Assembly: GCA_976226885.1 (NCBI GenBank)
Contig: OZ320317.1
Coordinates: 24,800,001-24,864,000, forward strand
Source of the DNA: Iphione sp. A-MEVVRFRX5
Taxonomy: Eukaryota
DNA length: 64,000 bases
Direction: 5' to 3'
The translations under genes were made by a program, and so were the position numbers. The notes under the pieces are model-generated. The model did no database searches, was not told the DNA's origin, and saw nothing but the letters and a program-made list of their open reading frames with translations. The first letter of the stretch is position 1. Every line of letters starts with the position of its first letter. Positions 1-62,111 of this stretch are shown one piece after another.

Positions 1-422
1 CAGTTGCAGCTAGAGCATTGTTTTCTTTGAGAAAAAAAATCAACCTTATTCGTGCCAACCAGTGTTGAAATGTACATTACTTCAGCCGATCGAGCCTAGC
101 ATACGTGTCACATAAAATCACAATAGGTTGAAGATATCCGACTAGATACCCTCCCAATGATCGTTCCGTACCAATGCATATCTTATGAAACTGATGAGAT
201 CATTGTAATTTGTGTTTTTGCTCAAAGTCATAGACAAATTTGAGAGACCCAGATGGTCAACACTTTTCTTTCAATTCATGCTAGACTTTCCGGTTAACAA
301 AAGATGGGGTCGGTTAGAATAATTCCAAAATGATTGACCTAAAGATCAGTGTCCTAAGAATGTAAGCTCATACGTTGTAATAGGACACATGCAAATAATA
401 AATTTGTTTTTTTATATTACAG

Positions 423-603
423 GAGTGGGCTCGGCACACCGGTAAATACAGGGAGGGCTTGGATAAGCTCGAGTGGGCCAAATGGAAGACCCGGCTTCGG
501 TGCGCCTTCAACAAAGCCCCAGATATAGAAGAGTTAAAAGATCAGTCAGAGCTGGATGGACCAAACCCCTTCAAAGTGTACATGTTCAAACCGAAGGACA
601 ACC
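423..603 (+). CDS. IRF: IRF-A exon: C-terminal half of the IRF DNA-binding domain
   Basis: AG at 421-422, donor gtaagt at 604; translation contains GKY, WKTRLRCAFNK and PFKVY motifs diagnostic of IRF DBDs. Confidence 0.95.
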
Positions 604-3600
604 GTAAGTATGAAAGCAAATGCAATTCTGACCAGTAGTTCACAGACAACACCTCTCTGTTATGTAGCCCCATAACGCCCACTCGGATTCTATGCCAAAA
701 AAAGGGGGGGTGCTACTGTTTTAATTTTGGTCATCTCTCTCAGTCATTTTCTAGCATTATTTCGTACTCTAAAGCACTGAATCTATCAGAATATGAGCGT
801 AGGGGAGCCCAACTATGGGTCAAGATCGTACTCAAGCAGCAAATCAGTTTCAAGTACGCTTATTCCATTCAAGTTAGGTTATCTGCACCGTGCATGGACT
901 ATTGAAAAATGTTTAAAGATTTCATGCTATTTTTATATTAAAGTTTGTTAAGTTACCGGTCGAGGGAGCCACGTATATTTCAACTGACAAAGAAATGTTT
1001 ATCGTCTGTGTGCCATAAAGCACAAATATTTATCCTTTTTTCGGTATATGTAATGTTCTTCCCTTCTTTACAACTTGTACAGATTTCTTTATCACCATGG
1101 AAAATAGAACAATGATTTTGCTCCTGATCATTTTGACTAGCCTGTTGATTTCTTATTTATCACTTTTTCCCAGAACCCAAGAAAGAGGAAAAAAAGACGA
1201 ATAAAGTCGTCAAAGAAAAAGAGGAGACAAAAATGGTGAGCATATCAAGATAAAACTTGCATTCTGTCTTTTTATGCATCTTTTTAACTGTGTAAAATTC
1301 CAACTTTCACCTCAATATGAATGTATGTTTTTATCCGATTTCATATGTCCTTGTTAACATACACTGTATCTAACTTGTACAGTACTTAGCAACTTACCTT
1401 GTGGGCAACTCAACTAGGAGGGGAATTCAGGATTAAGAGCAAGTTTGGTTGGTCCCCATGGTTTATTTTATATGATATGATTAATTCAGGTAAGAGGGAA
1501 ACCTGCATTTAAGGGCATCTTTGTCTGGTCCCATTAATGGTCTTGATTCTGAGTTGCTCATATAAGTAAATTCATAAATTCTTCCTCTTAGTCCCAAGAG
1601 TAAGTGAGGCTGGTCTACATAGCTTGAATTGGCAGCGCAGATGATTTTTTTCACGATCACCTTTACATACTTTACCAAGAGTAGGATGCCTCCTACCATG
1701 GCCAACCCGCACCAGCTACAGTCAGCTGTGAAGAGTCCGGAGACAGCCATTGAGTTGACGTCAAGCAAAGTAGCAGCTAGCTTGTCGAGCAGTCTCTTTT
1801 GAGAGTGGCTTGAGGGTCAAGTAGTCTCGAAGTTGTTTGAGGATGAATTGTCATAGAGTTTTCCGAAGATCAGGTCGTCTCAAAATGTGTCTGTGGCATG
1901 AATCGTCACAAAAGTTGTCATCGAGCTGCTCGAGGGTTAAGTTGTGCCAAAGTTGTCTCAGGACGAGTTTTCTCAATTCCTCTAAGGAGTGAATCATCTG
2001 AAAGTTGTCTGAAGGATCAGTTATCCGAGGGACAAGTGATCTCAAAGTTGTTTTAGGGAGGTATCATCCCAACTTTGTGAGTTGTCTCAAACCTGCATTC
2101 CTCCATGGTAAAGGTGTTTGGTGACTCGGGTCATCAGTAGTCAGGTAGATGTTTGAGTGCTATATGCTTGGGTCAGAGGTCACAGATGTCAGGCCTTCAG
2201 TGCCATGGCTCGGTTGTTGCTGGTTAAACACGAGGCCCCTCATGTCTTAATGGTCAGTAGTCATATATGACATGAGCCCTGTTATGGCATGATTCGGTTG
2301 TCGGAAGTCAAATGGAATGGTTTTAGTGCCCAGTAGTCAGAGAGATGCAAGTCACCTAGGCTCACTGATCAGTAACAAGTTGGTTATGAGGCTCCCTATA
2401 TCAGGGCTTAGTGGTCAGTAGTCTCGTTTACATGAGGCCCCCTGTGTCATGGCTGTCAGTTGTCAGTAGTCAGATAGACGTATGGCCCCCCGCCTCTATC
2501 ATGGCCCAATTTTCAGTACTCAGATGGACACGAGAACCCTTCATGGTGGTTCAGTGATGAGTAGTTGAGAGACCTGAAACCTCTGATTTCATGGCCCATT
2601 GGCCAGTAATTAGGTATATATTAAGCCACTATGTTTCCATAGTCAAATGGGTACGCAACCCTAGGTGTCTTCAGTCAGTGGCCAGTAGTGAGGTTAATAT
2701 CTGTGTCCCACTTCCAACAGCCCATGTTAAATGTACTTTGATATTCTTCCGACTCATGCTCACTTGTGTTTGCCCTCATGACAAGTGTTATCAAACTGAT
2801 GGTTGTTGTCTCTGCTGTCTTCAGACATATCAGGAGCCTTTCCTGCCTAATGTGCTGGATGAGTTCAACTTATCAAACAAAAGTAAGCTCCAGTTTACTA
2901 CCTTGTGTCACTTTGGCAGTCAGTTCTTGTTTATTACTAGAATCCCACAATGTGGGTCAGATGATGTCCACATTTGAATTTGTCATTTAAGTGTTATTTG
3001 TATTCTGTAAAATACAAGAAGGTATACTGTATAAATAATAATGACAATAATGATAATAATAATTTAGAATAATAATAATAAACACTATCAGTATCATGGA
3101 CAGTACTAAAAGCAAATGGCAAATGTGTGTTTTGAGTAGGGAGCATTCAGATCCTGCTATCCTGTGTATGAAGTGAGTAAAATGTGTTCCAGGGAGAGGG
3201 ACAGTCTTTTTGATGGCTCAGTCGGCCCCTTGCCTCATTATGTCACTGTTGGCTGTTCCTGGTGGGTCTGGTGAGCGAGTGAAAGGGATGGGCGGCCTTA
3301 GGCAGCAAAGGAGGACATCTGAAAGCCGTAGCAGCAAGGGTGGCTGTCTGAAGCTGAAGGCAGTGAGGGTGGGTGGGGGTATCATGGCCATAGGCAGTGA
3401 GAGAGGGGGAAGTGACAGTTGTAGTGAGGGAGGGAGTGCCTGTAATGAGTGAGGTAGGGTGAATGATACTCGTAGTGAGCGAGGAAAATGTGTCTGACAG
3501 CTGTACTGAGTGAGAGAGGGAAGGAAGGTGCCTGTTAGGCTGCAGTAAACATGGGAGGTTGCCAGCTGGCCATGGGCAGTGAGGGAGGGTGTCTGATGGC

Positions 3601-9600: not shown

Positions 9601-12600
9601 ATGTCAGGAGGAAAACAGCAGGGGTACCTTTGTAAGGCTAAGTATTTTGGTACTACTTCTGTATGCAAAGATTATCTTATTTGGGTTTTTTTCTGCTTTT
9701 ATTTTTTGGACAATTAGTCAACTCAACCATCGTTTGTCTAATGACCGAGGATACGTCCCATTGCCACATTGTATGTTTATGTCTAGTGAAAAAGACTAAT
9801 AGCCAACATACCTTTTTTATGTAAAGGGTTTCTGGCTAGAAGTTTTTTTTGTATTGTATGTTTATGTATATCACATCAATCACATAGAAACAGTTGAAGG
9901 AAAAGTATTTTCCTTCATTCCAATACTAGCTTTAGTTTGAGACCTTGGTAAGATCGTGCTTGTCCAAAGCCTTTGTGGAAATAGTATTCAAATGCTGATA
10001 AAGAAAACGTTGTGTGTAGTATATTTCATTCGGATAGAACCGATTTGTTGAGCAGGAAAGAATAATAAATTCGGACTCAACATGCTTATCAGTTCGAATT
10101 GTTCTCCTCTGTACCATCAAATGTCATCATGCAGACACCCCACGGTCCTGACTCTAATTAACCTGGCTAAAGTAGTTGTCTAACTTCTTGTTTTGTAGAA
10201 GCTTGGGCCTGCCGATGCCCACCAGCTGCACTTGCCACCATGCAACGGACTTGTTGGTGCACCTGAGCATGAGGAGTATACTAAGATACTTCTCGAAAAC
10301 TTAATGCGAGGAATTTATATTGAATGTGAGGAAGGCAACATCTATGCGACTCGGCTTTGCAGGTACATGCGGTAGTTGACCTTGACATTTAGAAACTCTA
10401 GATGCATTAAGCATCAAAATGAATACATAACGTCGGTGTACTCAAACCTTTTCATCCAGAAACTCAGAATATAAATCTATTCCGTATTTTTAGATGACTT
10501 CTCAAGATTTTAGGGGTGATAATGTAAAACGACAGTTTGATAAATTTGTTCTTATCTAGTCAGATCAGGAACCTGCGTGTAGTTTTTTGTTCACCTTGTC
10601 AAGAACTCGTATTTTAACTAGTGCCCCATCATACAAGTCATAAACCATAAATGTTAGGTATATTCATGTCCGTTATTCAAGTAATGAATAGCGTATGCAT
10701 CTAGCGTGTGTGATTCTAAGAAAAGTCTCCTGTTAAAATTTCATCATCATCTCCTCAGGTGCGTAGTGTACTACTGCAGCTCCAGTCAGCAAAATGGGAT
10801 CAAGCTGAACCGGTCCATGAGGACCAAGATTTTTGACATGGCGGGCTTCGTTCGCGCCTACCAGACGTATAAGAGAGGCCAGGGCAGTAAGCCCAGTCCA
10901 GAGGTGGCGCTCGGCTTCGGCAACCCCATCAGCTACGTCCCAGTGAAGGAGAAACTGCTCATCTCAGCCTACGTCCTCAGTATGCAGGCACACAAGCTGC
11001 TATCCGAGGTGCGCTAAGTTTTCTGTTATTGCTATTGTTGTTGTTGTTGTTGCTGTCGTTGTTGTCTTTGGTTCGACAGGTTTTCATTAGCCCAGTCGAC
11101 TTTCATTGACACAGCATGGCCGAGGGGTCCCATGAAGTATAGAACTATAAAAATTGGAACAATAATTTTAAAAAGAAGTATAGATTTTCCTGGCTCAAAA
11201 AGGAACAAATAAGAACATCAAGAGACTTAACTAAAAGCAGCCCTCTTCAGTGGTAATGGTGTAATGCTAACAGTAACGGTATCGCTATTGCTGTTCATGA
11301 GATTTCTACTATGCAATTGTATAGGGTTTCCCTCGCTTGATATTTCTATTAGGGATAACAATTTCAGTAGTAAAACACTTGTCTAATGCAGCTTAAACTT
11401 AGCTTAATACTTAGATATGTACCATTCGAGCGAATCTGTAATAATAGTAGATTTCAGCAGCTATGGCCTGTAATATGATGTATCTTTATCTAGTGTAACT
11501 ATTTTGTAATGCTTTTTAAACTAGGATTACACTGCTATGACCTTTAGTCTGATTTACCTTTGTAAACTGGGAATTTAACCAAAGTAAACTTAGATGAAAG
11601 GTATTGTAATTTTTACAGACTATTCCTAGATCTTCTATAGAATAAGAGTATTAAAAACCAAGCAACCATATTCTTGGCAGACCATAGTTTAGACATGGTC
11701 AGAATTACGGACTCTTTACAGAGGAACGAATTTTGTTATACCCGGTAATAATGGTTGGTCACAATACGAACACAACCTGAATTAAGAGTTTCATTCAGAA
11801 CCTTATGGTGTATTGTAGCGTTCAACTACGTGCTGAACATATTTATAATTGAATATATATATATATATGACAGACTCAGTAATCCTTAAGGAATCGGTCA
11901 TTTGAAAGCAAATTTCTTAACTGTTGGAGACGAACGTGTTTGTCATGAATGCTGGAATGTCGTAAAAACCAACTAAATATATAGCTCACATCTACATTAA
12001 CTTTATGGCAGGACTTACATGGATTTTAACAATGTTTAACAGAGCCCTGTTCCATAAAGAAACATGTTTCATTAATATAAAAAGTTTACACGGTGTTTAC
12101 TATTGATGTCATTTGGAATTTTCATTACAATATATTCATAATCATATTCTAGACATACAGCTATAATGTTTTAAAGGAAAGGTGTTTCAAAGATATGTAC
12201 ATAACGATTTTTTAAAAAAAGAAACATGTATACAGAATACTTTCTACTATACAGCCGACCCTCATTGGTTTGAACATACAGACATGAAATTCTATTGTGA
12301 GAGTAGCCAAAGTAAGGTTATGGCACTAGATGCTATACACAATATGAATTCTATAGATAAGTTCTAATGTTGTGTGATTTTGACGGATTTTTTAAAAGGG
12401 ACGGGTACTTGAAGGCCTAGCGGCATGAAAGTATGGGACGAGGTCAACTGTATAGGAAAAAAGAAATTGTTAATGCTTGAGAGTAAAAATAAGTTTGCTT
12501 GATATAAATAAATACTTGTAAAACAATCATTTTATGAGACATTTTGTCTTCTTTGTGCTCTATCACCAGAATGCAGTTGTCTGCCAGGACATTAACTTGG

Positions 12601-25900: not shown

Positions 25901-27936
25901 CTATATACATTCAGAACTCAGGATCGAAACATGTGATTTCTCAACCATACAGNNNNNNNNNNNNNNNNNNNNNNNNNNNNNNNNNNNNNNNNNNNNNNNN
26001 NNNNNNNNNNNNNNNNNNNNNNNNNNNNNNNNNNNNNNNNNNNNNNNNNNNNNNNNNNNNNNNNNNNNNNNNNNNNNNNNNNNNNNNNNNNNNNNNNNNN
26101 NNNNNNNNNNNNNNNNNNNNNNNNNNNNNNNNNNNNNNNNNNNNNNNNNNNNNNNNNNNNNNNNNNNNNNNNAGTGTTTTTGTACATACATTTTTGTACA
26201 TGGATTTTCAGTTTACCCACTTTTCCCCACCAGTTATGTACATTTACGCACAAATACATCCTTTTCCAGACTTTCTCCGGTCATTTTTGGAGGTTTTGTC
26301 CTTCTGCCCTTTTTTCATCCTTTTCCTCACCATTTTTGCCGGCCTTTGCGGTATTGTCTGTCTTCATCCTTTTCTTTGTCATTTTTGCTGATTTTTGCAG
26401 TATTTATTGTCAAGTTCATCCTTTTTCATGCTTTTCCTCATCATATTCACCAGATTCACACAGCCTAAATGTAAGACCAAAGGACAGCCCTCTCCATTGA
26501 GCTGCGTGAATACAAAAATGCATACCAACACACATGGAGGTCTAATGCAGCCTATTGCAGACAAACATGGTTAAGAAAACCAGGCCTGAGTGTGCATGTT
26601 ACACGACACAGTCAATAAAGTCTGGAGTGAACCATGTTCATTGATGCACATACAGTCGCCTTCGCCTAAAGCGACCACCTAAGGGACTGAACAAAAGTGG
26701 TCGCCTTGGTCGCCTAAGCTATTGGCTACTCCTCCTACTTAATTTGATTTGTTCTTTGAAAAATTGGTTGCACTGGCCGACTGGTCACCCTGGCCGACAA
26801 GTCGCAGGGTGAGAGTCTACTGTATTTGTATTCGTGTTGTACATAACATAAGAAGTCATCCACACAGAGATCTGAGGAAAATCAAAGTCACAGAAAACAA
26901 GGAAAGACATATAGAATACGTGGTTAGTCCACGCGAATTCTGGGTGTAAAAAGAAACAAGAAAAAGAGAACACAGGAAAAGACGATGAAGAAAGCTCAAC
27001 ATCCTTATGAGCTAAATATGGACGTTCAGGAAAGAATGGCCACTCTTATAAAATGCGTGTCTGCTGATCTATAGGCATCGCATTTATAGAGTGGAGTATA
27101 AGCCGACTTGCATGGCTAGAAAAGAGTGGGTAAAAAAGTGCAAATTTTTTTGATAAAAGATTGTTAGCTTCATCACTTCATTCACAATATTTCATCATCN
27201 NNNNNNNNNNNNNNNNNNNNNNNNNNNNNNNNNNNNNNNNNNNNNNNNNNNNNNNNNNNNNNNNNNNNNNNNNNNNNNNNNNNNNNNNNNNNNNNNNNNN
27301 NNNNNNNNNNNNNNNNNNNNNNNNNNNNNNNNNNNNTTTTCATCATCGTCAATCGTCATCATCAAATAGGAAACAACAGGGCAACGTGGTAACACAAAGC
27401 TTATTACATAGATTATGTACTACCATTGGACCTATGGGATAAATGGCCCGGACTTTCACTGCAACTGATGAATAAATAAAAGAAAGTGTTAAAAAGCATT
27501 AATCCAGAACAAAATACGTGTACAAACAGTTTGTTGTATGCCTCATTCTTTAAGTGGTACAGTCAGGGTTTTCTTCTCACAAACTAACCTTTCTCATAAG
27601 TCAGGCTGAATTACAGTGTATATCATCCTCTATATATCGGGCACATTGCCGAACAACTCAGCATGTATCAAAAGACAGCAATTAATAACTTACATCTATT
27701 ACAACCCTGATTCCACATTTCTATCAAAGCATGCTTTGTGAAAAAACAGTTTTACAAAAATCACAACGGTGATGGGTGGGAGCTCATGCTGAAGCCATTC
27801 CAATCAAAAGACCCGACAGAACAAAAATATAATATAATAATTACATGGGTTCTTCTTGTATTTATATATATATATACAAATATATATCTACGAGTATCAA
27901 ATACATTGTGGCAGAAAACATCCTTTCACACAGAAA

Positions 27937-30900
27937 TCAAGATTTCTGATCCAAAAGCCCTTTTATGTCTTGGTAGAGGTCGGTACTGATTACTCTGGCT
28001 AAGGTTAAGAAACTTTGCAGAACCTCGGGGTCAATGTTGTACGGTCTTCGTTCACTGCAGCTGGCACCCCTGCTGCTTTCTCCATTGCAATTCAAAACAT
28101 TCCCCGGCAGTGTCTTCGTGCTTTTTTTATCTCCTGCTGCCCCAGCAGGGGTTATGGCCACGTAACTGCCACTTGGTTTGGAACATGAAAGGTCCATGGG
28201 ACTTTCTTGGTCAGACTTGCTGATTTTCTCACTTCTGATAAAGGAGGCCGTATACATCTGTACTGCACTTGCTTCTTTCAAGCCGCTTGTGTCACTGCTG
28301 CTCACTCGGTTACAGGAGCCTGCGTTCTCTGTTACATCTTCGCTGCTACTGCCATCATTACTGTCGACTGAACTGTGACTGTCCATACTGTCGTGGCTGT
28401 CTGCATCCTTGGTGTCAGCATCCACTGTCCGTGGTATGATGGTAGCCCGTATGTCAGCCTCCGGTTTCTGAAAAATGAATTCACTTCGTTGGTCACTCCA
28501 TTGTTAGAATATTTCTTTCCATACTTCATGAACACTGATTAGGAGTTAGCAGTGGTAAGATACGGAACAAAGAAATCAGTCTTCCAAAGAATTTTACATT
28601 CCCCTTAAACTTTGCTATGGAAGTAGTGTTGCCTATTAGCTTCAAGTGGTTACAATGGAGAGGTGGTAATTATGACCCTTCCCCCCATCATCACCCCCAC
28701 CACTCCCTCAAGCACTTTTGTACTGTGAACTTCCATCCGAGGGGTAGAAAATCAAACATCGCTCACGACCTTTCCTCACAGATAAGTTTCATGAGAACCA
28801 AATGTTTGTGACCCGTCAACGAATAGAAATCTAGCATAATCTCGCTAATCTGTGCTGCCCAGTCTGTTTATAGATTTGCCATCAATCACACTAGATGATT
28901 CTCGTCATGCATGGTAAACTTTGGATGAAATATGCATTATGGCCGACTTGACAGGCCTGAGAAACAAACCTTAGTCATGTTTTCAAGTGCTGCCTTTCGG
29001 TTGCGTTCTGCCTTAACATGCTTGGCAACATCTGGAACAGGAACGAACCATTAAAACATTGGTTACGAGTTTTCTGATTTATTAGACAAATTAATGTTAA
29101 AAAATGACGGAAAATATTTTCATACAGTCGGATCTTGTTATCTACAGAGGTTCTGAAACATTCACTAAACAGATTCACTTATATTACAGGGTCTCTTCTC
29201 TGTGTATTTTTAGTATAAGCTTATTTAGGAATCTGGAGAATTCAGTTCCTGGAGGATATAGAATGTACATGACATGATCGGTAAAAATAACTTCCTCCCA
29301 ATATATATGAGGACTGGTAGTTCTTATATATATTTTCTTCTCATTTCATCAATATTCTTCTCACAAATGTGTACTCGCTACATTCGTATTTAATGAAATT
29401 CAATTTACAGGATGGATATTGGATTGGATGCAGTCCATTTATCCATAAATGATCAAAGTTCTTCACAGGAGTTATGCTAGTACCTTCTTAATCTACAAAA
29501 CGTTCTAAAGGTCACGAGTTCAGAACACTGACATCCAAAAATCCGCATTTGGCAGAACTAGAGAAGCACAGAGTATGTATGTTATTTCGAGCTATACATT
29601 TGGGTTTTTTTTTATATCTGTCGAACAAGGTGGGTGTTGCTGTACAATACCCATGTACAGTTGAGTCTACTCTATTTACGACCACCACTTGGGACCAAGC
29701 CCAAAAGGTCATAATGGCAAATTTGGTTGTAAATAGAGTATCAAATGTATGGAAATTGAGATTTTTGTTCCCAACTAAAGTGGTCTTAAATAGAGAATGG
29801 TTGCAAAATGATGTGGTCGTAAATAGAGACTCCACTGTATATAAATGTCTTAAAAGAAGGATTCCTGTAAAGAGGCGATGGCAGAAAAAGGATTGAGTTC
29901 ATCTTTTTATAACTTGCCTTGATGAAATACTCTCATACACATGTATAGATGTAAAATTATACACACCTTTTCCATTAGTTTTAAACATATAAACTTTATA
30001 GGGATTATCACCCTCCAGATCTGAAAGATCCTTCAGTTCTGTGATGTCAGGGGACTTGTTGAAGGCACACCGAAGACGCACTTTCCACTTCGCCCATTCT
30101 GTCTTATCCAGACCCTGGCGATACTTCCCTGTATGTTGGGCCCACTCCTGTGAAAATGGAAAGAAAACTTACTGCAATGAATATCAATATAGGGTAAAAA
30201 AATGCAATACAGATAATGATCACTTTAACATGGACGGGAAATAAATCCTGACAGAACAAAGCCCTACATTTCTGTGTGCATGCATACAGGCAAAGTTTCC
30301 TATCTCAATGATCTGCTTAACACAACTGTCCAAGGAAAATGAGAAAATTCAGATGGTCACATTTGTATTCTCTGGTTCAAGGAATTAACTTATCACAAAG
30401 CAGCTTCAGTTGTGTTTGCACAACTGACCAGAGCAGACCTGTTTTAACAGTTCTATTCCAGCAGGCTAAACCTGGTCAACCAGATACCCAGACAAGTGAA
30501 CTCGAATTCCAAGTTGAAAAATACAGGGAAAGCTGAGCATTTTAAATTTTCAGCTAAGCTATTTCCGTTGACCTATGCACAACTGGTATCACAAGCCAAG
30601 CAAGGCCAGTGCTGAAACCTCCAGCCTCTAAGCAATCACTTCACACCTCCAGCCTCAGGTAGCAAATTTGCCTTTATGACCAACTTAACAGCTTGACCCA
30701 GATAATTTTTACCCACAGCTTCACAGAAATGTATTCTCTTAGTTGTTTTCTTTCTCCTCGCCTCTTTTCTTACTATTTTTTCACCCCAACAGGAAAGAAA
30801 ACCTGTCTTTTACAATCCTATCTACACAGTCCACCCTGACCCATGAGGCAGTAAGGTTTGTTTTAAAGAGACAAACATTTATCATAGTTTTTCATTTTGT

Positions 30901-33900
30901 AACACCCAAAAGCCAATCCATGCCAACATGACCTAGCCTAACAGCAAAGTCTCAGCTTAATCAACTGATAATGAAGTATAACTGATCATGTCCTGATGAA
31001 GGCTTAATTAAGGGACCAAACCGTTGAGACATGTATCTTATGACACCACTAATAAACACTAATTCACCATCATGGGGGTCACCTGGTTTTGTTTGTCCTA
31101 CAATTAGGACTCTGATACAACTTATTTTGTTTCACTAAAATCTATATTTTCAGCCCCCCACCCTTCAATTAGGCCCAAATTTGCACATCTTAGAGAGGAT
31201 TTATTTGTTCTAAAGAGATAAACACTCCCCCCCCCCAAATGCCCTCCTTTTCTGCTTTACTGCCAGTACAGACTGACCTATGAACACCGATTTGATCCAT
31301 ACTCCCCACTAAACAGGACCAACCGACAGATACACCCTTCATCCCCTCCGAACTTAACAGAGAAGCAAAGACACAACCTCAGGAGACAATGACATCATCT
31401 ACTCCATGTTGCAAGAATCACCAAAATGATTCCATAAACCCATACGTGTATATAAATATATCCCTTAATAAAACTCTTCTGCAATCGGGTCATTCTTTAT
31501 TAAGGTAAGTCCTACAAGTGAAGGTACTGGAGACCTTCCATTTTACTGTGTATGAACACTCATGTCATACTACTGGTAGTGCTGCATGAGTGAGTGCACT
31601 GTTCTCGACTCCCTGACCACAGCAAAAGGGAAACTTAAGACTCCACAAAAATCCATGGCATGAATTACATATGTAAACAAATGTACACCAACATATACAG
31701 TTTTATAGATTTTGGCAAAACAAAGAAATGAAAACAGAGCACTGTTTAGAATTTGTAGTAGTTCCTAATAAAAGAGAATAAATGTAGTCATGTAGAGTCA
31801 GCCCCACTAAGCCAAGAAAATGGATTGTTTCATTAGAAAGAGTGCATGTGAGAGAGAGTTCAGCTATCATAAACATTAAATACAGTAAAAACCTTCATAT
31901 TTCCCCCAAGGTGTGCGGTTCTGCAGGGAATCCACAAGTGTGAATTTGAGGGGGTTCACTGTATTTTACCTGTCACTAACCTAGTTTCACTCAAGATTGG
32001 ACAAGAACGGACTCACTGCCAACTGGGGTGGGAGTGGGGGGTTCTGTACTAACCATAAATATCTGTGAATGTTGTGGAGACCAGTCCTGCTTTCCACCAT
32101 GCTTCCATGGAATGCGAAAGATGGATTTCTCTTTGTTCATCCATTGAAGTCCTGGGATATCACCACTGTCAATCTTGGATATCAGCCATGGCCTCAAACG
32201 CCTGCGATTCTCACCTCCTGGCTGAACACGTGTTGTCTAGGAAGAAAGACAGGTAACAGAAACAGTACTATTATAAGTTTAGGACAAAAATCTCTTTCCC
32301 TTTCTATACTTAAGTCCCATGATTTCACAACTGTCAATCTTGGAGATCGGGCACAGCTTCAGATGCCAGTAAATCTCACCTCCTGACTGAAATGAATTCT
32401 ATGGATAAAGGTTAACAAGAACTTTGGTCTGAGTTTTATGTGTATCAAAGTGCTTTTCTTTTGCCTCTCAACTTCAGCTCCAGTATGTCAATACTATCGA
32501 TCTCGGAGATGAGCCATAACTTCAAACATCTACTCATTTCCAGACCAAACACAGATTGTTAAGATTAAGAGTGCCAGGTAGGCTACAGCCATTGTCATAA
32601 TAATTTAAAAATTTGTTGTTTATCTATTTAAGTCCAAGGATGTCAACACTGTCACTGTGGAGATCATCCATTGCTTCAAGCATCTGTGATTCATACCATC
32701 TGACTGAACACCAGTGGTTCATGGAACAACACAGAGGTAACATAAACATGAATATAGCTTTGATTTATAACATGCATAGAGCAAAAGTGTATCTGTACAA
32801 TGCTTATAGACTATCATGGAATTTTTTTGAGATTGTATTGTTTACTCAGGTTAAAAGGAGTGACTGGGGCTATTATCTGACCAAGCCAGCATAAAGGGGA
32901 TTACTTTTCTCCTGGCTGTCTAAATTCTTTTTCTGGTGTTTTGAGGATTTTCACAAATTCTAAGTTTTTTTCCCTTTAGGGATTTTTAGGGGACGATCTT
33001 CTACTTTTCTTGTGCTGTGATTATCCTGTGTACAACAATAAAATAATGCTATGAAGTCAACCCCAAAATTTACTTACAAAGATCCAAATAAAAAATGCAC
33101 CTATGGACATAGCTTATTTGAAAGTATTGCTTATTTAAGATTATCAAATTCTGAACTTCAAATTGTTTTTAAATGTTGAACTTCGAGCACTTCCCAGTGC
33201 CTAGCCTCCCACATGAATACAGATGCTCTAAACAAACAATATATGCTCTAAACAAACAATGTATGTTTCTCTCTCTATATATATAAATATAGTTTCGCAC
33301 ACCAGTGCAGTCAATTATTCCCAACTTACAGACTCTGGTGTTGACAGTGTGAAGGTTTGTGTGACTGATGGTTCTGGCTGTCTCTCCTCTGGAGGAGATG
33401 AATCACTGGAGGTGTCCGGCTCCTCCTTCACACACGGCAGGTTATCTAAGCTCACTGTGATGGGGATGGCGAGAGGTGCCTTGTTGAGCTGGGGAGTCTG
33501 AATTGTCTTGGTGACCGGAGCTACTGTTTGGGTGAGGAGGGACTGGACACTGGTGCCAGTCTTGTTTGATTTTAATGATACCGGCACGAGGCAGATGTCT
33601 GTACGAGGTGAGCCCGTAGCCTTAATGTTCTTCTCCAAGGAGGCAGGTTTTTCCTCCAGGGCAACTACTGATACCTTTTTCTCCATCTTAGAGTCTTTTG
33701 GTATACTTTTAATGACGTAAACCACATCTTGGACAGGCACCTGCATGGCCAGCCTATCTGACATGGTGGAGCCTGGTTTAGAGTCTTGTGAAGAATCACA
33801 AGCAAGTGTATAACTCACTGAGGAGGGCATAATCTTGACCCTTTTCAGAGCAGGAGGGGAGTCCCCCTCTGAAATTTTCTTCACAGCCTTCACTTCCATG

Positions 33901-33938
33901 CTTCCCAGCACTTTGGAGTCACTGCTCGATCTAATCAT
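27937..33938 (-). CDS. IRF: Interferon regulatory factor B: N-terminal extension + IRF DBD + low-complexity C-terminus without IAD, ~521 aa, 5 coding exons
   Basis: Exons on minus: 33938-33330 (ATG, 203 codons, donor gtaagt), 32236-32054 (RRRLRPWLISKIDSGDIPGLQWMNKEKSIFRIPWKHGGKQDW), 30147-29967 (EWAQHTGKYRQGLDKTEWAKWKVRLRCAFNKSPDITEL...PYKVYMF), 29031-28970, 28467-27937 (TGA). Phases 0/0/1/0 chain; the 181-nt and 62-nt exons match IRF-A exon sizes and phases exactly. Confidence 0.88.
29658..29837. mobile_element. Tc1/mariner (pogo/Tigger-like) MITE
   Basis: TIRs cagttgagtct(a)ctctatttacgaccac / cagtggagtctctatttacgaccac, flanked by TA on both sides. Confidence 0.75.
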
Positions 33939-43575: not shown

Positions 43576-44663
43576 ACTCTGTAGCAGGCCTTTTTCAGAC
43601 ATTCCCGTTTCTAAAGTAGTTATAAATCCCTTGAAGACATGCCCAAAAGACGTCCCCTCCGACAGACAGATAATTGTGAACTTTTCCTACTCAGAGGTTA
43701 ACTCATAAGTTTCAGATCAAGCCTTCTATGGTATCCAAATTAATTTAAAGCTCCTTACCACTTATACCTCAGCCCCAGAAAACAGGTTTCTGTTCTTATG
43801 TGTTATCTCCATGTGCGCAAACTATATCTGAACCCGCCACTGGTGGCTGGGAGAGTGGGGAAATCAGACAAGGCAATTAAGATAGACTTATCCCCATGTG
43901 CATGGATGGTACGGACCTACCACTGGATGCATGCAGACCAATCAGTATTGGTCCGGTCCATCCGGACCCTGCCACCTCATGTGTGCTGGAAAAAGACATT
44001 TAACATATGTAAAACATTAATTAAAATGCTTGCTTTAAGTGTGTCATCCACGGATTTGAATGTTAAAGGCCTGTAAACCTCATATCAATGAAAACAGAGA
44101 CAGTACTTAGGGAGTCAATGACTCGTATCCCACACCACACATTCGTGTATTCTATAGACAGCTCCATGATTTCCAAATCAATGTATACATGTGTAGTCGG
44201 TTAAATTATTCATAGAGCAAATGTTTACTCCGTTTCAAGTCCCATTTGCACTGGATTTTAACGGATGTGTCAACATCGAGGTTTATCATTGTGATTCAAT
44301 GCAAATCAAAGGCATAAATCAATGTACAGATACACAAAGCAAAGGTTGCAGTAACCAGGGTGATGTATGTCGGATAATAGACAGGAGGAAGACCTCCGCA
44401 CCCTTTGTTCTCTTAACGGACCAGAGGATAGATGAGGAAACAGGGAGTTTATCGTGACGGAGACAGACAGCGAAGGAAAGCAACGTTGTACATTCAAAAC
44501 AAATTTGGTGCCTATGCTACTATAGTGGTGCTTCTGAATCTACACTTATGAAAAGATTTTATTTCTTGCTGAACCCACAGTCACTGGAGGAATATAAAAG
44601 GTGAACATTTCGTGACGAATCACACAGGAGGAATACACCCCAGACACATTCGCACTCAAAATA

Positions 44664-46514
44664 ATGCTTTGCCATGGAGGGAAAAAAAAGATTTTTATTG
44701 ACGCTGATGAGAGAAGCCCCCCTGACGTTCTGCCCGTATGGATCGAGTCGATTTGCTCAGATGAACGAGCCAAGGCCGAGCAGCTCCTGGAAGCAAGTGA
44801 CTCCAAAACCAGACAGTTCCTTCTCCATGGGACCTTCCCCAAATGGAAGCCTGTGGAGTGTGAACATAAGAAGGCTTGTAGGTGCTATCCACCCTACCTA
44901 GATTGGGTTGGCAGATGTTCCCTGAACATTGCGGTCTACATGCCCTCTCCAGGGATCCTCCATCTCCTTCTGGCCCAAGGGGTGGACTTTCAGGCCCAGG
45001 GGGAGCCCCCTGGAGGCCTCCTCCATCGACTTGTACAGTCTGCCTACCACCGCCGGAGTAAGATGGACAAATACATCTCTGTCTACCTCTGGTTCTGTCA
45101 AAATCTGGACAGACATGCCATGGCAGCCTTACTCAGTGTTGAATCAAGCGATGGCTTGAGACCACTAGAGAAGGCCGTACAGTTGGGGCTGTATGATATC
45201 TTTTACCTTATCCTTGACACACCTGGTGTTTACCTGGCCGAACAAGAGAGGAAATTCGGAATGGCCTATAAACGGTACGATATCAGTGACTACTTGCTTC
45301 CCAATGGCAAACGCAGGAATGCCTCTCCTCTGAACAGTATGGTCCTGCTTGATGGCGCCTGCATGGCCAGACAGGACACACAGTACTTTCTCCAATCACT
45401 CCCCATTCAAACGTGGTTCACATGCAAGTACAGAGCCTTGAGGCACATCCTGGCCATATCAGTAGCTAATCACCTCCTGAGGATCGCCGTGTTCTTCGCC
45501 TTGGAACAAGAAAAGCTGATGAAAAAACTGCAGAGCTGCAGCCAGGTCAACAACATGTCCCTGTTACAGGGTGATATCTCACGAAACACAACTGAAATTC
45601 ACCATGACTGTCAAGTCGATGTCTCTGTTGTACCTATCGCACTTGCCAGTGTATATATCTTCATAAACTTAGTGCTATCCCTCCTAACGTTGGTATCAAC
45701 AAGAAAGATGTTCAGCTCTTACAGGGGAGTCAGAAACAAGATTCCTGTAGTGGAGCCCCTTTTCTTTTACGCGATTGACGTGTGTATGGACACAGTCATT
45801 TTAGCGAAGACGCTTGTAATTTTACTATTGCTGGTCGTTGCAGATACCTTCCACCCTCTCCTACTGCAGCTCCTATATATTCTAGATCTTGCAGTTCTTC
45901 CATGTATTTTCAATAGTCTTCGTTTCCTTCTCATCACCGACATCGGTCACCTTGTTGTTATATTGCAGAACATGATTAGGGACTTCCTCCAAGTCTCAAT
46001 CATACTTCTAACTTTTCAGTCCATCTTTGCCGTGGCCTTCTACAATCAGGCCACCGTATACAACGTTGAGGCATACGGAGCAGACGGTCACACTAGCTTC
46101 CAGACTTGGGACCAGAGCTTTTACAACATGCATGAGCTGATGCTCAACACCATCAAGATCAGTGATATTCCCATTCTCAACCCTGCTTACCTGTTTTCAC
46201 TCCACGTGATTTACACCTTTCTTGTGCCGATTTTGCTGATCAACCTCCTCATCGCAGTCTTTTCGGACTCTGTCTCAAAAATATCCCAATACAAAAACCT
46301 CGTCCTGATGTTCCAGCGCTACGTCATCGTCAGTGAGGTGGAGAAGTGGTTGTGCTGTATTGCTCCAAAGTGGTATTTAACATTATTGGGCGAGACGTTC
46401 ACCCTGAAAGATGGCAGACTGTACCTAGTGATCCTCTCAGTGGATGAACACCTATGGTCTCCGGAGAGGTCAATACCAAAGTTGGACCCTTCACTGCTGT
46501 CTGTTAGTCAGTGA
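44664..46514 (+). CDS. Single-exon TRPV-like (TRPVL-type) cation channel, 616 aa
   Basis: Ankyrin-like repeats (LLHRLV, DGLRPLEKAVQLGLYDIF), pre-S1 KRYDISDY, six hydrophobic segments, S4-S5 linker DIGHLVVILQNMIRDF, pore helix SFYNMHELML, S6 ILLINLLIAVFSDS and a TRP-helix equivalent; uninterrupted ORF. Confidence 0.85.
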   Translation: MLCHGGKKKIFIDADERSPPDVLPVWIESICSDERAKAEQLLEASDSKTRQFLLHGTFPKWKPVECEHKKACRCYPPYLDWVGRCSLNIAVYMPSPGILHLLLAQGVDFQAQGEPPGGLLHRLVQSAYHRRSKMDKYISVYLWFCQNLDRHAMAALLSVESSDGLRPLEKAVQLGLYDIFYLILDTPGVYLAEQERKFGMAYKRYDISDYLLPNGKRRNASPLNSMVLLDGACMARQDTQYFLQSLPIQTWFTCKYRALRHILAISVANHLLRIAVFFALEQEKLMKKLQSCSQVNNMSLLQGDISRNTTEIHHDCQVDVSVVPIALASVYIFINLVLSLLTLVSTRKMFSSYRGVRNKIPVVEPLFFYAIDVCMDTVILAKTLVILLLLVVADTFHPLLLQLLYILDLAVLPCIFNSLRFLLITDIGHLVVILQNMIRDFLQVSIILLTFQSIFAVAFYNQATVYNVEAYGADGHTSFQTWDQSFYNMHELMLNTIKISDIPILNPAYLFSLHVIYTFLVPILLINLLIAVFSDSVSKISQYKNLVLMFQRYVIVSEVEKWLCCIAPKWYLTLLGETFTLKDGRLYLVILSVDEHLWSPERSIPKLDPSLLSVSQ

Positions 46515-58705: not shown

Positions 58706-59916
58706 TCCCTCCCCTTCTTGAGAGCAATGCCACCATTGCCCAGCGTATGTATGGCCAAGGCTATTGACTGATATTATCAGGACAACTTGGGCCGTTGTCC
58801 TTACACAAGACTATACGCTCCGTATTCAGGTACAGGAAAACCTAGCTGGCCATTATCTGAACCTGCCTAGGCTATTGGAAGAGGGCATCATCCGGTCGCT
58901 GCAACCACGCACGCTGCCATCGGATCTGGAGTACGTCCCAATGGAGAAGGAACTACTCACCCGGGAAGAACGAGGCATATTCTCGGTCATATCTACACCC
59001 GGACTTCCATCACAAAAATATTCCTATCTTCCTATCCTACTGTATCATTTTAATTTCATTCTTGTGTATTTTATTTTGTTTGTTTAAGAGAACCACCCGT
59101 CACGCTCCTGTGACTGGAATTCAGCACACCACGTCCTTAGGGAGTTGCACAAGGACCGCATTTTCTCGTCTGCTGGTGAAGTACAGATCAATCATTCTCA
59201 TCGTAAGAGTGGGGGTAACCTCTTGGAAAGAAAGAATAGAGTATGGGAATACGGAACTGAAGCAAGGCCTTGGCCGACAAGCTCAGACTCCCTGGATGAC
59301 CATGAGAGATCCCTTCACAGGGAAGTGGACAGCTTGGGCCCACCACCTCACAGAAGACTACAGTCCGTAGGAAAGAAAGTGTGGCGGCCCTAAGGCTCAG
59401 ACCAATCCTTGGAGCGCTAAGAGGAGGGCACTCCGAAACAATATGTACAACTAGGAGACCAGTCCTCTCAACCTTCCGCGGCAGTCTGACACCTTCCCGT
59501 TACTAATTAACCCAAGCGATTATAGTGATTTTATCCTCCTTACAGGTAATATGGTACGTGTTGATTCACAACCATGGCCATCAGCCTCTTTGTCCATTAT
59601 TTCAAGTCATCACAATTCAGCAATTGGTTACACAAGATTAAATGTTAACACGCGTTGGTTACATGTCATGACATTCACGGTATACATACTTTGTTTGGTT
59701 TTTTTTTTGTTTTTTTTTTTATTTCCAATAATAACAACAACACTTTTCAACAATCGACCCGTCCGGCGGTAACTACACCAGAAACAACAGCAACAACAAG
59801 ACATCTTGAGCGGTAGACTCGCCTGGTCTAGCACTCGTGTCGACACTACATAACAACAGTATACCTTGAGCGGGAGATCTTCTCTCCACCTGCCAACCAT
59901 GTACTCATAACCCCAT

Positions 59917-62108
59917 TTACTGAAATACGGAAAAGGGATACTTCTTGGGAGCTGTCGCCTGCAACCCCGTGTTGCCCTCGGGTCTATACACTTCAAGCTG
60001 CTGGGATGGACCATTAGACAAACGCACCGCACACTCAGGCACCACTCTCTCAGGTTCAGGCAAGGGCGGAATGGCATAAGTGACAGTGGTATTAGTAGGT
60101 CGCACCCGTTCAGGACTTTCCTTCGCACCTGCTTCCCCTAAATTGATGGTAATAGGAGCCGACCCATTTCCTGACCCCCTTGGTCCCATAGGTGACCGCT
60201 GAGCTAAGCGCCTCCATTTTCCCTTTTTGCACAAACAACAATAGCAGCACATTCCCAAAGTCAGTGCTGAACTCAATCCTCCTAACGCCCAAATAATCAT
60301 AGAAGTCATTGAGGTTCCTGGCAACAAGGGATTATTTGCCACTCGATCGTACAGGTTATTAATACGTTGCATGATGTCTGCTACATCTGACTCCATTAAC
60401 GCCGGAAGAGGTTGCAAGTTCCCTGTATGGTTGGGAGATTCAGGCAGATTTGGGGTCCAGACCAAAAGTTCGTTTACCACAAGCCCAGTAGGTAACACAA
60501 TAGGGTCACGCTCTACCTCATACTCGCTCCTCTGTTGGTAGTATGTTGGTAGTGACATTTGGTCCCCAATAGCTCCACAACCATTTGGCAAGTTCACTAG
60601 CGCAAACGGCGCCGGTACGTTTCTCCGATACATCGTACCGTTAACACATTGAATCCGCAAGGTCAAATCCATGGGCGTAGTCACCACCCAATTGCCCCTA
60701 TCCAAATAACGCGCTTGCGGCATGGACACATTGTCCAGTACAATTCGCTGGCACAACTCGCGAACCCGTTCTACCTCTCCTCGGAAGATAGCCATAACGC
60801 AATAAGAGTGCATATTCAGTTCGTAGACGGAGAGGAGACGAGGTAAGACCCTTCTCGCAACTGACATCTAACCAGTTCTTCGGTGGTCGCAATGGCATAA
60901 CGCCGTCTGTCCTTGGTGACTCTGAAGTAGGTGAACTCCAACTGGAACTGAACAGCTCTGCCCGCTTGAATAGGTACAGGAATGTTCACTGCCTCATACA
61001 TCGTGTATGAAGCCATCGGGTCAATTAGCGAAACACTCACAGAAGTGATGATTCGTCCCTCAAAGATGATGGTAGTTGTCTCTAAAGTACTATAGTAGCT
61101 CCACACATCATCAGGCTCAAAAGGTAACTGGAGTGTTGGAGGCAGCTGACGAGCTACACCAGCAAGCAACTCCTTCAGCTCAGTAGCCGGAACGACTTCA
61201 GGTGTCAAATGTCCTCCTAACAAGTGATCTACTCGGGCCTCAAGTCAGTCGACTGCGCTTTCCCAAACAGCTAACTGATACTCGAATCTGGAGAAATATC
61301 GCTCAGCGTTTAATATGGTATGGATATGCTGTATCTCCTTCGCGGTAATGTTACTAGCGCGCTGTAAAGCCTCCCATAAATCTCCTTCTACCAGCTGTAA
61401 TTTACTCATCACGTCATTCACACCATCTCTGTTTCGCCTAATCTCAACTCGAGTCTGATTGATAAGAGTCATCATGTCTCCCATAATGGTCATCATTTCC
61501 AGCTGTTGTCTCTGCATTTGTCCCACGCGATGTTTGATAACATGGATCTCATTTCCTACCACACCAAAACCAGTGGCGGTACCGGCAACCAGCGTGATAA
61601 GGCCAGTCACAGCCGCTACCATGACTGCCCGTTTCTTCCTGGGTCCCGTTCGATTAAGAGCTAGAGACGGATCATGGACGGTAGCAAACGGAATGCGCCC
61701 CGGCCGAGTCTGCACCCCAAGCCGCGCTATGCTGTCAATCCGCTGCAAACCCAGACGTATTCGCTCCAGTAACACGTCAGCTCGGTCCATCTGCGATCTC
61801 ATAAGGGTTCTCGCAACCGTTTCTGTACGTACACGATCCCCATAACGGTGGCGCGGCGGCATAACCAAATACGCCATCTTCAAGAACCCGTTTCTCGTCT
61901 TGTTCAACTGCTCTTGTAGGACATAACCGGCTTCCTTGTATTGATCATATTCCAACACCAGATCAATTCTCCATGTCGACAACACCGATCTCACATCCAG
62001 TCTCTTTTTGAAGATCACATTTTCCAAGGAGCCCTCCTGCGATTGGCCAACCCACGCCAACAACATCAGAATCAAGAGGCCACCTGGAAGTAAAGAAGAG
62101 AACCGCAT
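59917..62108 (-). pseudogene. env: Envelope/fusion glycoprotein (class I-like; baculovirus F / errantivirus env-type architecture), ~730 aa, one nonsense and one frameshift
   Basis: Signal peptide MRFSSLLPGGLLILMLLAWVG, furin site RKKR (61629-61640), fusion peptide AVMVAAVTGLITLVAGTATGFGVVG, heptad-repeat region, G.L.P..+P motif, Cys-rich region, TM IIWALGGLSSALTLGM followed by CCYCCLC and a cytoplasmic tail. In-frame TGA at 61245; frameshift near 60826. Confidence 0.85.
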
Positions 62109-62111
62109 TAA

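What the first reader, a model, noticed from the sequence alone, without database searches (positions are those of the whole stretch)
27937..28467. IRF-B replaces the IAD with a PxDLS (CtBP-type) motif and a short helical C-terminus
The last exon is Ser/Asp-rich, contains ESPMDLSCSK (PMDLS at 28186-28200) and ends in an amphipathic segment (IDPEVLQSFLTLARVISTDLYQDIKGLLDQKS*). PxDLS is the established CtBP co-repressor docking motif. I do not recall it as a standard IRF feature, so a CtBP-recruiting IRF would be a distinct repression mechanism.
Basis: partly seen in the sequence, partly recalled or inferred. Interest (0 to 1): 0.7.

Follow-up and report, generated by a model that had tools for sequence, protein, structure and literature searches.

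The report
IAD-less IRF with candidate CtBP motif
An invertebrate interferon-regulatory-factor gene ends in a disordered acidic tail that carries one textbook co-repressor (CtBP) docking motif and a self-pairing helix shared with a transposon protein; the motif is real and plausible, but whether it works could not be tested here.

Summary
PMDLS lies at 28186-28200 on the minus strand. It sits in a Ser/Asp-rich last exon (28467-27937) that ends in a predicted helix.

I rebuilt the gene as five GT-AG exons encoding 521 aa:
- a 203-aa N-terminal extension;
- an IRF DNA-binding domain on two exons;
- a new 62-nt basic exon, needed to keep the frame;
- the last exon.

No IAD is present. The only IAD in the genome belongs to the neighbouring gene IRF-A.

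For CtBP docking:
- the motif lies in predicted disorder;
- the genome has a CtBP gene whose N-terminal exon is near-identical to that region of rat CtBP;
- language-model neighbours of the exon are E1A, NRIP1 and ZNF238, which I recall (ZNF238: per a paper) as CtBP binders. A motif-less paralogue gets none of them.

Against:
- P.DLS turns up in 0.8-2.4% of shuffles;
- the only relatives, three near-identical paralogue copies, lack it;
- no orthologues and no RNA runs could be found.

New here: the C-terminal helix is a module shared with more than 100 copies of a zinc-finger ORF of a Penelope-like element. It is predicted to self-pair (0.49 against 0.02 for the best control).

The scan noted a similar IRF on another piece of this genome (s1-327849). 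My odds of functional CtBP recruitment are about 45%.

The parts
33330..33938 (-). Exon 1: ATG plus a 203-aa N-terminal extension with an NLS-like PPALKRVK. No known domain.
   Evidence: The donor TCT|gtaagt is in phase 0 and is conserved in the paralogue. Exon length is 609 nt in both copies. No Pfam hit. The exon occurs only at the four IRF-B-type loci of the genome.
32054..32236 (-). Exon 2: first half of the IRF DNA-binding domain. An alternative in-frame acceptor at 32221 is the one conserved in the paralogue.
   Evidence: Pfam IRF positions 1-49, E 7e-18. Splice sites.
29967..30147 (-). Exon 3: second half of the IRF DNA-binding domain, ending in a phase-1 donor AAAAG|gtgtgt.
   Evidence: Pfam IRF positions 49-104, E 6e-16. 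IRF-A has a phase-1 donor at the same position.
28970..29031 (-). Exon 4: 62-nt basic mini-exon (DVAKHVKAERNRKAALENMTK). It restores the frame between exons 3 and 5.
   Evidence: Acceptor ttccag| and donor AAG|gtttgt are both conserved, and the exon is 62 nt in both copies. Splicing exon 3 directly to exon 5 gives a stop after 4 codons.
27937..28467 (-). Exon 5, the finding itself: 176 codons plus the stop.
   Evidence: The frame is open in both paralogues despite 32% nucleotide divergence. dN/dS is 0.61.
28045..28467 (-). Ser/Asp-rich tail, predicted disordered.
   Evidence: Most of exon residues 16-135 have pLDDT below 50. Composition.
28186..28200 (-). PMDLS, a candidate CtBP docking motif (protein residues 435-439).
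   Evidence: Absent from the paralogue.
27940..28044 (-). C-terminal module PYNIDPEVLQSFLTLARVISTDLYQDIKGLLDQKS. The helix spans 27943-28029.
   Evidence: AlphaFold2 helix at residues 147-175. BLASTP E 2e-9 to the C-terminus of a 430-aa zinc-finger ORF of a repeated element. 119 genomic matches to the module profile. Aligned. Homodimer prediction 0.49 against 0.02 for the best control.
10202..11011 (+). Context: the IAD exons of the tail-to-tail neighbour IRF-A. This is the only IAD found in the genome.
   Evidence: PF10401, E 8.5e-9 and 1.4e-4.

Best explanation
IRF-B is a lineage-specific chimeric IRF of 521 aa. Its parts, in order:
- a novel N-terminal extension;
- a well-conserved IRF DNA-binding domain;
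- a basic mini-exon;
- a disordered Ser/Asp-rich tail;
- a C-terminal helix of a type otherwise found at the end of a zinc-finger ORF carried by a Penelope-like retroelement.

Proposed mechanism:
1. The domain binds ISRE/IRF-type sites. This is inferred from conservation.
2. The helix pairs two IRF-B molecules, standing in for the dimerising role of the missing IAD. This is predicted only.
3. The exposed PMDLS docks CtBP, turning the dimer into an active repressor that could oppose the IAD-bearing neighbour IRF-A. This is inferred from the motif alone.

What is shown: the gene architecture, the absence of an IAD, and the presence of the motif.
What is predicted: disorder, the helix and self-association.
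What is untested: CtBP binding and repression. I put those at about 45%.
For: - Gene model: all five exons have GT-AG sites and compatible phases. The paralogue keeps the same five exons, with identical lengths for exons 1, 3 and 4.
- The domain is constrained. It is 75% identical to IRF-A although synonymous sites are saturated (pS 0.91, pN 0.14). It has 3 lineage-specific changes against 24 in the paralogue (p = 5e-5).
- No IAD.
- PMDLS matches the core consensus and lies in a region with pLDDT around 40.
- A CtBP gene lies at G000:C15, about 49.816-49.821 Mb. One exon has CtBP1/2 as its 15 best PDB matches (E 5e-18). Its N-terminal exon is 35/38 identical to rat CtBP/BARS (1HKU/1HL3), including DVATVAF.
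- Atlas feature neighbours of the exon are a ZNF238 fragment (0.91), adenovirus E1A (0.85) and NRIP1 (0.76). All are CtBP binders: ZBTB18/ZNF238 per PMC9684030, the other two from my own knowledge. The motif-less paralogue exon gets none of them.
- Helix self-association: ipSAE 0.49, best of three controls 0.02. The mark was reached by 21 of 30 proteins solved as homo-pairs and by 0 of 23 solved as single chains. The runs agree in at least 94% of contacts, and partner pLDDT is at least 77.
Against: - P.DLS arises in 0.8-2.4% of shuffles, and the looser pattern in up to 14%.
- The three paralogue copies lack the motif.
- No orthologue could be found to test conservation. There was one weak hit among 1.84 billion representatives, and the word searches were empty.
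- No RNA run was listed, so exon 4 inclusion and expression are unverified.
- dN/dS of the exon is 0.61.
- The atlas recognition value is low (1313), and scores under 0.9 are leads only.
- An acidic tail followed by an amphipathic helix is also what an activation domain looks like.
- The homodimer pass is a model's confidence for a single short helix. That calibration is weaker for eukaryotes and is untested for disordered chains.
Confidence: 0.45

Rival explanations
1. PMDLS is a chance or very young match with no CtBP role. On this reading IRF-B acts only through its DNA-binding domain and the dimerising helix. It would be either a passive competitor for IRF sites, or an activator that uses the acidic Ser/Asp-rich tail plus the amphipathic helix as an activation domain.
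For: - Shuffle frequencies of 0.8-2.4% (strict pattern) and 3.5-14% (loose pattern).
- The motif is absent from the only homologues.
- The tail evolves with dN/dS 0.61.
- The conserved element of the exon is the helix, not the motif region.
- None of the transposon ORFs that share the module has an ELM-type CtBP motif.
Against: - The paralogue is the fast-evolving copy (24 against 3 domain changes), so it may simply have lost the motif.
- The flanks of the motif resemble those of proven sites, and the atlas neighbours are CtBP binders only for the motif-bearing copy.
- CtBP and its N-terminal region are conserved.
Confidence: 0.4
2. The last exon is not translated as modelled. Possible reasons: exon 4 is skipped, giving a truncated protein with the N-terminal extension and DNA-binding domain that ends four codons into exon 5; the gene is unexpressed or decaying; or exon 5 belongs to another transcript.
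For: - No RNA evidence could be obtained.
- Exon 4 is short, and its protein sequence is poorly conserved between the copies (45% identity, dN/dS 1.6 over 20 codons).
- Introns and exons of the two loci differ by similar amounts, about 68-80% nucleotide identity.
Against: - The 176-184-codon frame stays open in both copies after about 32% nucleotide divergence. By my estimate the chance of that is about 1e-4 per copy.
- The splice sites and the 62-nt length of exon 4 are conserved.
- The IRF-B domain is under strong constraint.
Confidence: 0.12

Closest known systems
Vertebrate IRF1/IRF2 (IRFs without the SMAD-like IAD1; IRF2 is a repressor)
   Same: An IRF DNA-binding domain is followed by a basic stretch and a non-IAD regulatory C-terminus. 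The proposed role as antagonist of an activating IRF is also the same.
   Different: - The domain scores higher against IRF4/IRF10 than against IRF2 or IRF1 in the PDB.
- The domain is internal, behind a 203-aa extension.
- The C-terminus has no sequence relation to IRF1/2.
- The C-terminal helix is shared with a transposon ORF.
PxDLS-bearing CtBP-recruiting factors (adenovirus E1A PLDLS, NRIP1/RIP140, ZBTB18 VLDLS, and Drosophila Knirps PMDLS from memory)
   Same: A single short P-x-D-L-S in a disordered region of a nuclear DNA-binding or regulatory protein. These proteins are the atlas neighbours of the exon.
   Different: No binding data exist for IRF-B, and conservation is not demonstrable. 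As far as I could find, no IRF has been reported to carry such a motif.
Human CtBP1-HDAC1/2-IRF1 complex (PMC6643137)
   Same: An IRF-family factor and CtBP are reported together on one promoter.
   Different: That paper names no PxDLS in IRF1 and mentions the motif only for CtBP1-HDAC contact. Here the motif would be in the IRF itself.
Zinc-finger second ORF of a Penelope-like element in this genome (also noted by the scan as s1-320360)
   Same: The C-terminal module PY-[DGN]-[IL]-x-P...L..S.L...R..S.DL..D[IM]..L...K sits at the very end of the protein, after a long low-complexity linker.
   Different: The transposon ORF has two N-terminal C2H2 fingers where IRF-B has an IRF domain. There is no nucleotide-level similarity, and protein similarity is limited to the last 33-61 residues.

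Membership tests
IRF transcription factor family | Tryptophan-repeat DNA-binding domain (Pfam PF00605) | tested here: met
   Two exons cover profile positions 1-49 and 49-104, E 7e-18 and 6e-16. WKH and RLRCAFN are retained.
IAD1-bearing IRFs (IRF3-IRF9 type) | C-terminal IRF association domain (Pfam PF10401) | tested here: not met
   No Pfam hit in exon 1 or exon 5. The genome-wide six-frame scan finds PF10401 only at window 10202-11011 (+), in IRF-A.
CtBP-binding PxDLS linear motif class | Sequence match to P-x-D-L-S (ELM-style pattern, recalled from memory) | tested here: met
   One match, PMDLS, at protein residues 435-439.
CtBP-binding PxDLS linear motif class | Motif lies in an accessible, disordered region | tested here: met
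   pLDDT is about 40 around exon residues 90-94, and no secondary structure is predicted there. This is a prediction only.
CtBP-binding PxDLS linear motif class | A CtBP partner with a conserved N-terminal region exists in the same organism | tested here: met
   CtBP exons lie on G000:C15. The 15 best PDB matches are all CtBP1/2. The N-terminal exon is 35/38 identical to rat CtBP.
CtBP-binding PxDLS linear motif class | Motif conserved among homologues | tested here: inconclusive
   The motif is absent from the three paralogue copies, but that copy is fast-evolving. No orthologues could be retrieved.
CtBP-binding PxDLS linear motif class | Physical, motif-dependent binding to CtBP | not testable with these tools
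   CtBP is split over several exons, so no unaltered full-length reference could be handed to the complex predictor. This needs bench work.
C-terminal module of the Penelope-like element zinc-finger ORF | PY-x-[IL]-x-P followed by an amphipathic helix at the extreme C-terminus | tested here: met
   BLASTP E 2e-9. The module aligns with 11 ORFs from several subfamilies. 119 genomic matches.
C-terminal module of the Penelope-like element zinc-finger ORF | Pair of N-terminal C2H2 zinc fingers and linkage to a GIY-YIG ORF | tested here: not met
   IRF-B has an IRF domain instead. Zinc fingers and GIY-YIG are seen only in the repeat copies.

The most novel reading that the evidence does not exclude
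IRF-B is a host-transposon chimera. An IRF DNA-binding domain, duplicated from the IAD-bearing neighbour, lost the IAD and gained a dimerisation helix from a Penelope-like element's zinc-finger ORF. It then evolved a CtBP docking site. The result would be a dedicated dimeric, CtBP-dependent repressor of IRF target genes in an invertebrate, a repression route not described for any IRF.
Probability: 0.2. Interest if true: 0.7.

Novelty: new variant of a known kind. Interest (0 to 1): 0.45.

Why it matters
IRFs control antiviral and immune transcription. How invertebrate IRFs without an IAD dimerise or repress is poorly known.

A direct IRF-CtBP link would be a new repression route for the family. 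A transposon-related helix replacing the IAD would be a clear case of domain recruitment from a retroelement ORF into an immune transcription factor.

Both ideas can be tested with simple binding, reporter and oligomerisation assays.

If the motif proves inert, the gene is still a useful example of rapid turnover in IRF architecture.

Tried and rejected
- Direct splice of exon 3 to exon 5: rejected. The phase-1 donor gives a stop after 4 codons in both copies. That led to the 62-nt exon 4.
- Orthologue hunt:
  - the word search of the last exon found nothing;
  - the search of all 1.84 billion representatives gave only P0001, a 5-repeat protein at E 7e-5 that matches the helix region, which I judged uninformative;
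  - word searches with a 632-aa ORF from the window and with the transposon ORF were also empty.
  This lineage seems poorly represented, so the blank says little about novelty.
- RNA evidence: no run was listed.
- Pfam on exons 1 and 5: no hit.
- A CtBP/IRF-B complex prediction was not possible, because CtBP is split over exons and no full-length reference was allowed. The single job went to the helix homodimer instead.
- Nucleotide similarity between the IRF-B 3' end and the transposon copies: none. Only protein-level similarity was found, so the direction of transfer is unresolved.
- Exon 1 is not a repeat. It occurs only at the four family loci.
- A locus fetched from the genome (L001) showed letters where the window has N at 27200-27336. 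I did not use them.

Full report
**What is at the coordinates.** The gene lies on the minus strand. Reverse-complementing 28186-28200 gives the codons for PMDLS, within ESPMDLSCSK. The open frame starts behind an acceptor tttttcag at 28467 and ends at the stop at 27937-27939. The 176 residues are 18% Ser and 10% Asp.

**Gene model.** Pfam places the two halves of an IRF DNA-binding domain on exons at 32236-32054 and 30147-29967.
- Exon 3 ends in a phase-1 donor (AAAAG|gtgtgt). The neighbour IRF-A has a phase-1 donor at the same position.
- Joining that donor directly to 28467 gives a stop after four codons.
- A 62-nt exon at 29031-28970 has acceptor ttccag and donor AAG|gtttgt. It restores the frame and encodes a basic stretch, KHVKAERNRK.
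- The domain exon has no ATG. An upstream 609-nt exon (33938-33330) starts with ATG and ends in a phase-0 TCT|gtaagt donor that fits the phase-0 acceptor of exon 2.
- The result is 521 aa from five GT-AG exons.
- No RNA run was listed for this stretch, so the model rests on comparison alone.

**Paralogues as a check.** The last exon has three further matches in the 1.18-Gb genome, on C2 and twice on C22 (E 1.7e-31).
- These loci are more than 98.8% identical to one another over 9-10 kb.
- They align with the IRF-B locus at 68-80% nucleotide identity through exons and introns.
- They keep the same five exons and the same splice sites. Exons 1, 3 and 4 have the same lengths, and all frames are open.
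- Amino-acid identity is 45-67% per exon. dN/dS is 0.57 overall, 0.24 for domain exon 3 and 0.61 for the last exon.
- With IRF-A as outgroup, the IRF-B domain has 3 lineage-specific replacements and the paralogue has 24 (p = 5e-5). The paralogue changes include WKH to WPD and RC to RA in the recognition region.
- Against IRF-A, synonymous sites are saturated (pS 0.91) while pN is 0.14.

IRF-B is therefore the constrained copy, and the triplicated paralogue is the drifting one.

**No IAD.** Neither exon 1 nor exon 5 matches any Pfam family. A six-frame scan of the whole genome for PF10401 hits only window 10202-11011 (+), in the tail-to-tail neighbour IRF-A. By PDB scores the domain is nearest IRF4, then IRF10 and IRF2, then IRF1, then IRF3. 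"Replaces the IAD" is a fair description. IRF-B and IRF-A share 75% identity in the domain, and only IRF-A keeps the IAD.

**The motif.** PMDLS is the only P.DLS in the protein.
- It occurs in 0.8% of shuffles of the exon and 2.4% of shuffles of the whole protein. A looser ELM-style pattern, recalled from memory, occurs in 3.5% and 14%.
- AlphaFold2 predicts the surrounding tail to be disordered, with pLDDT around 40.
- The paralogue has a three-residue gap and NRSFY at this place. The motif is not shared, but the drifting state of that copy weakens the argument.
- No orthologue was retrievable. The word search was empty. The exhaustive search of 1.84 billion representatives returned one weak repeat protein. 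Unrelated ORFs of this genome also find nothing.

Conservation therefore remains untested rather than refuted.

**The partner.** The genome encodes a CtBP on C15.
- One exon has CtBP1/2 as its 15 best PDB matches (E 5e-18).
- The N-terminal exon is 35/38 identical to rat CtBP/BARS.
- That stretch includes the residue I recall as the PxDLS-cleft position A52 of human CtBP1. The one I recall as V66 lies in the next ORF fragment.

**A language-model lead.** The atlas feature search places the exon next to a ZNF238 fragment (0.91), adenovirus E1A (0.85) and NRIP1 (0.76).
- ZBTB18/ZNF238 binds CTBP through VLDLS (PMC9684030). E1A and NRIP1 are classical PxDLS proteins, from my own knowledge.
- The paralogue exon lacks the motif and gets none of these neighbours.
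- The recognition value is low, so this shows only that the motif and its context look like real sites.

**Literature.** Literature searches found no IRF with a PxDLS motif. A human CtBP1-HDAC1/2-IRF1 complex has been reported. That paper names no PxDLS in IRF1 and mentions the motif only for CtBP1-HDAC contact (PMC6643137).

**The helix.** AlphaFold2 gives one helix at exon residues 147-175, with pLDDT 79-87.
- The last 50 or so residues match the extreme C-terminus of a 430-aa ORF (BLASTP E 2e-9).
- That ORF has two C2H2 fingers and lies directly after a GIY-YIG endonuclease ORF. This is a Penelope-like element with a second ORF, as the scan also noted (s1-320360).
- A profile of the module finds 119 places in the genome, in ORFs of several length classes.
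- Eleven ORFs from different subfamilies all end in PY-x-[IL]-x-P followed by the same amphipathic pattern.
- Similarity exists at the protein level only, so the direction of transfer is open. The breadth of the transposon family makes capture by the IRF gene the simpler reading; that is inference.
- Two copies of the 41-residue module are predicted to pair. The score is 0.49 and the best of three controls 0.02. The mark was reached by 21 of 30 proteins solved as homo-pairs and by 0 of 23 solved as single chains. The runs agree in at least 94% of contacts, and partner pLDDT is at least 77.
- The interface uses the conserved hydrophobic positions.
- The tool's own caveat applies. The model supports binding and does not show it, and the calibration is weaker for eukaryotes.

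**Reading.** The architecture is firm. IRF-B is an IAD-less IRF with an internal domain, a disordered acidic tail and a transposon-type helix that probably self-associates. CtBP docking at PMDLS is plausible.
- A rough estimate from my own knowledge: a few percent of sequence-specific factors use CtBP, most of them through this motif, against a 1-2% chance rate. This gives roughly even odds.
- I lower that to about 45% for the missing conservation and the lack of expression data.
- The main rival is an inert motif in a passive competitor or an acidic activator.
- A smaller rival is that the tail is not translated as modelled.

**Novelty and score.** This is a new variant of a known kind: the IRF family with a new domain arrangement. 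The CtBP claim alone is a candidate, not a result. The transposon-shared helix adds interest. Interest is 0.45.

Noticed in passing
window 32312-32391, and weaker at 32445-32552 and 32624-32749: Degenerate tandem copies of the 5' part of domain exon 2 lie upstream of the real exon. One is 80 nt at 78% identity, 165 nt upstream in gene orientation. Their frames read as decayed versions of RLRPWLISKIDSGDIPGL.
   Followed up: partly
G000:C2:18310000-18320000, C22:32981500-32991500 and C22:48010500-48020500 (L009-L011): Three copies of a fast-evolving IRF-B paralogue sit in blocks that are more than 98.8% identical over 9-10 kb on two chromosomes. This is either recent segmental duplication or an assembly duplicate.
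   Followed up: partly
L005:2-1707 and more than 100 other places in the genome: A Penelope-like element carries a second ORF after the GIY-YIG domain. That ORF has two C2H2 fingers, a long low-complexity linker and a conserved C-terminal helix. Several subfamilies exist, with open frames of 331-430 aa.
   Followed up: partly
window 402-635 (+), 10202-11011 (+), and G000:C11:24797412-24797558: IRF-A is the tail-to-tail neighbour. It has a canonical N-terminal domain starting MSSESRQRLRPWL and the only detectable IAD in the genome. GC3 of its domain exons is 0.73, against 0.49 in IRF-B.
   Followed up: partly
window 44616-46511 (+): A 632-aa open frame, apparently intronless, that looks to my eye like an ankyrin or ion-channel-like protein. 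It has no relatives in the word-indexed protein search.
   Followed up: partly
window 59900-64000 (-): Long open frames that look to my eye like integrase and envelope-like parts of an LTR or retrovirus-like element. Observed only.
   Followed up: no
window 33860-33880 (-), protein residues 27-35: An NLS-like SPPALKRVK in the N-terminal extension is kept as SPPAPKRIK in the paralogue.
   Followed up: no
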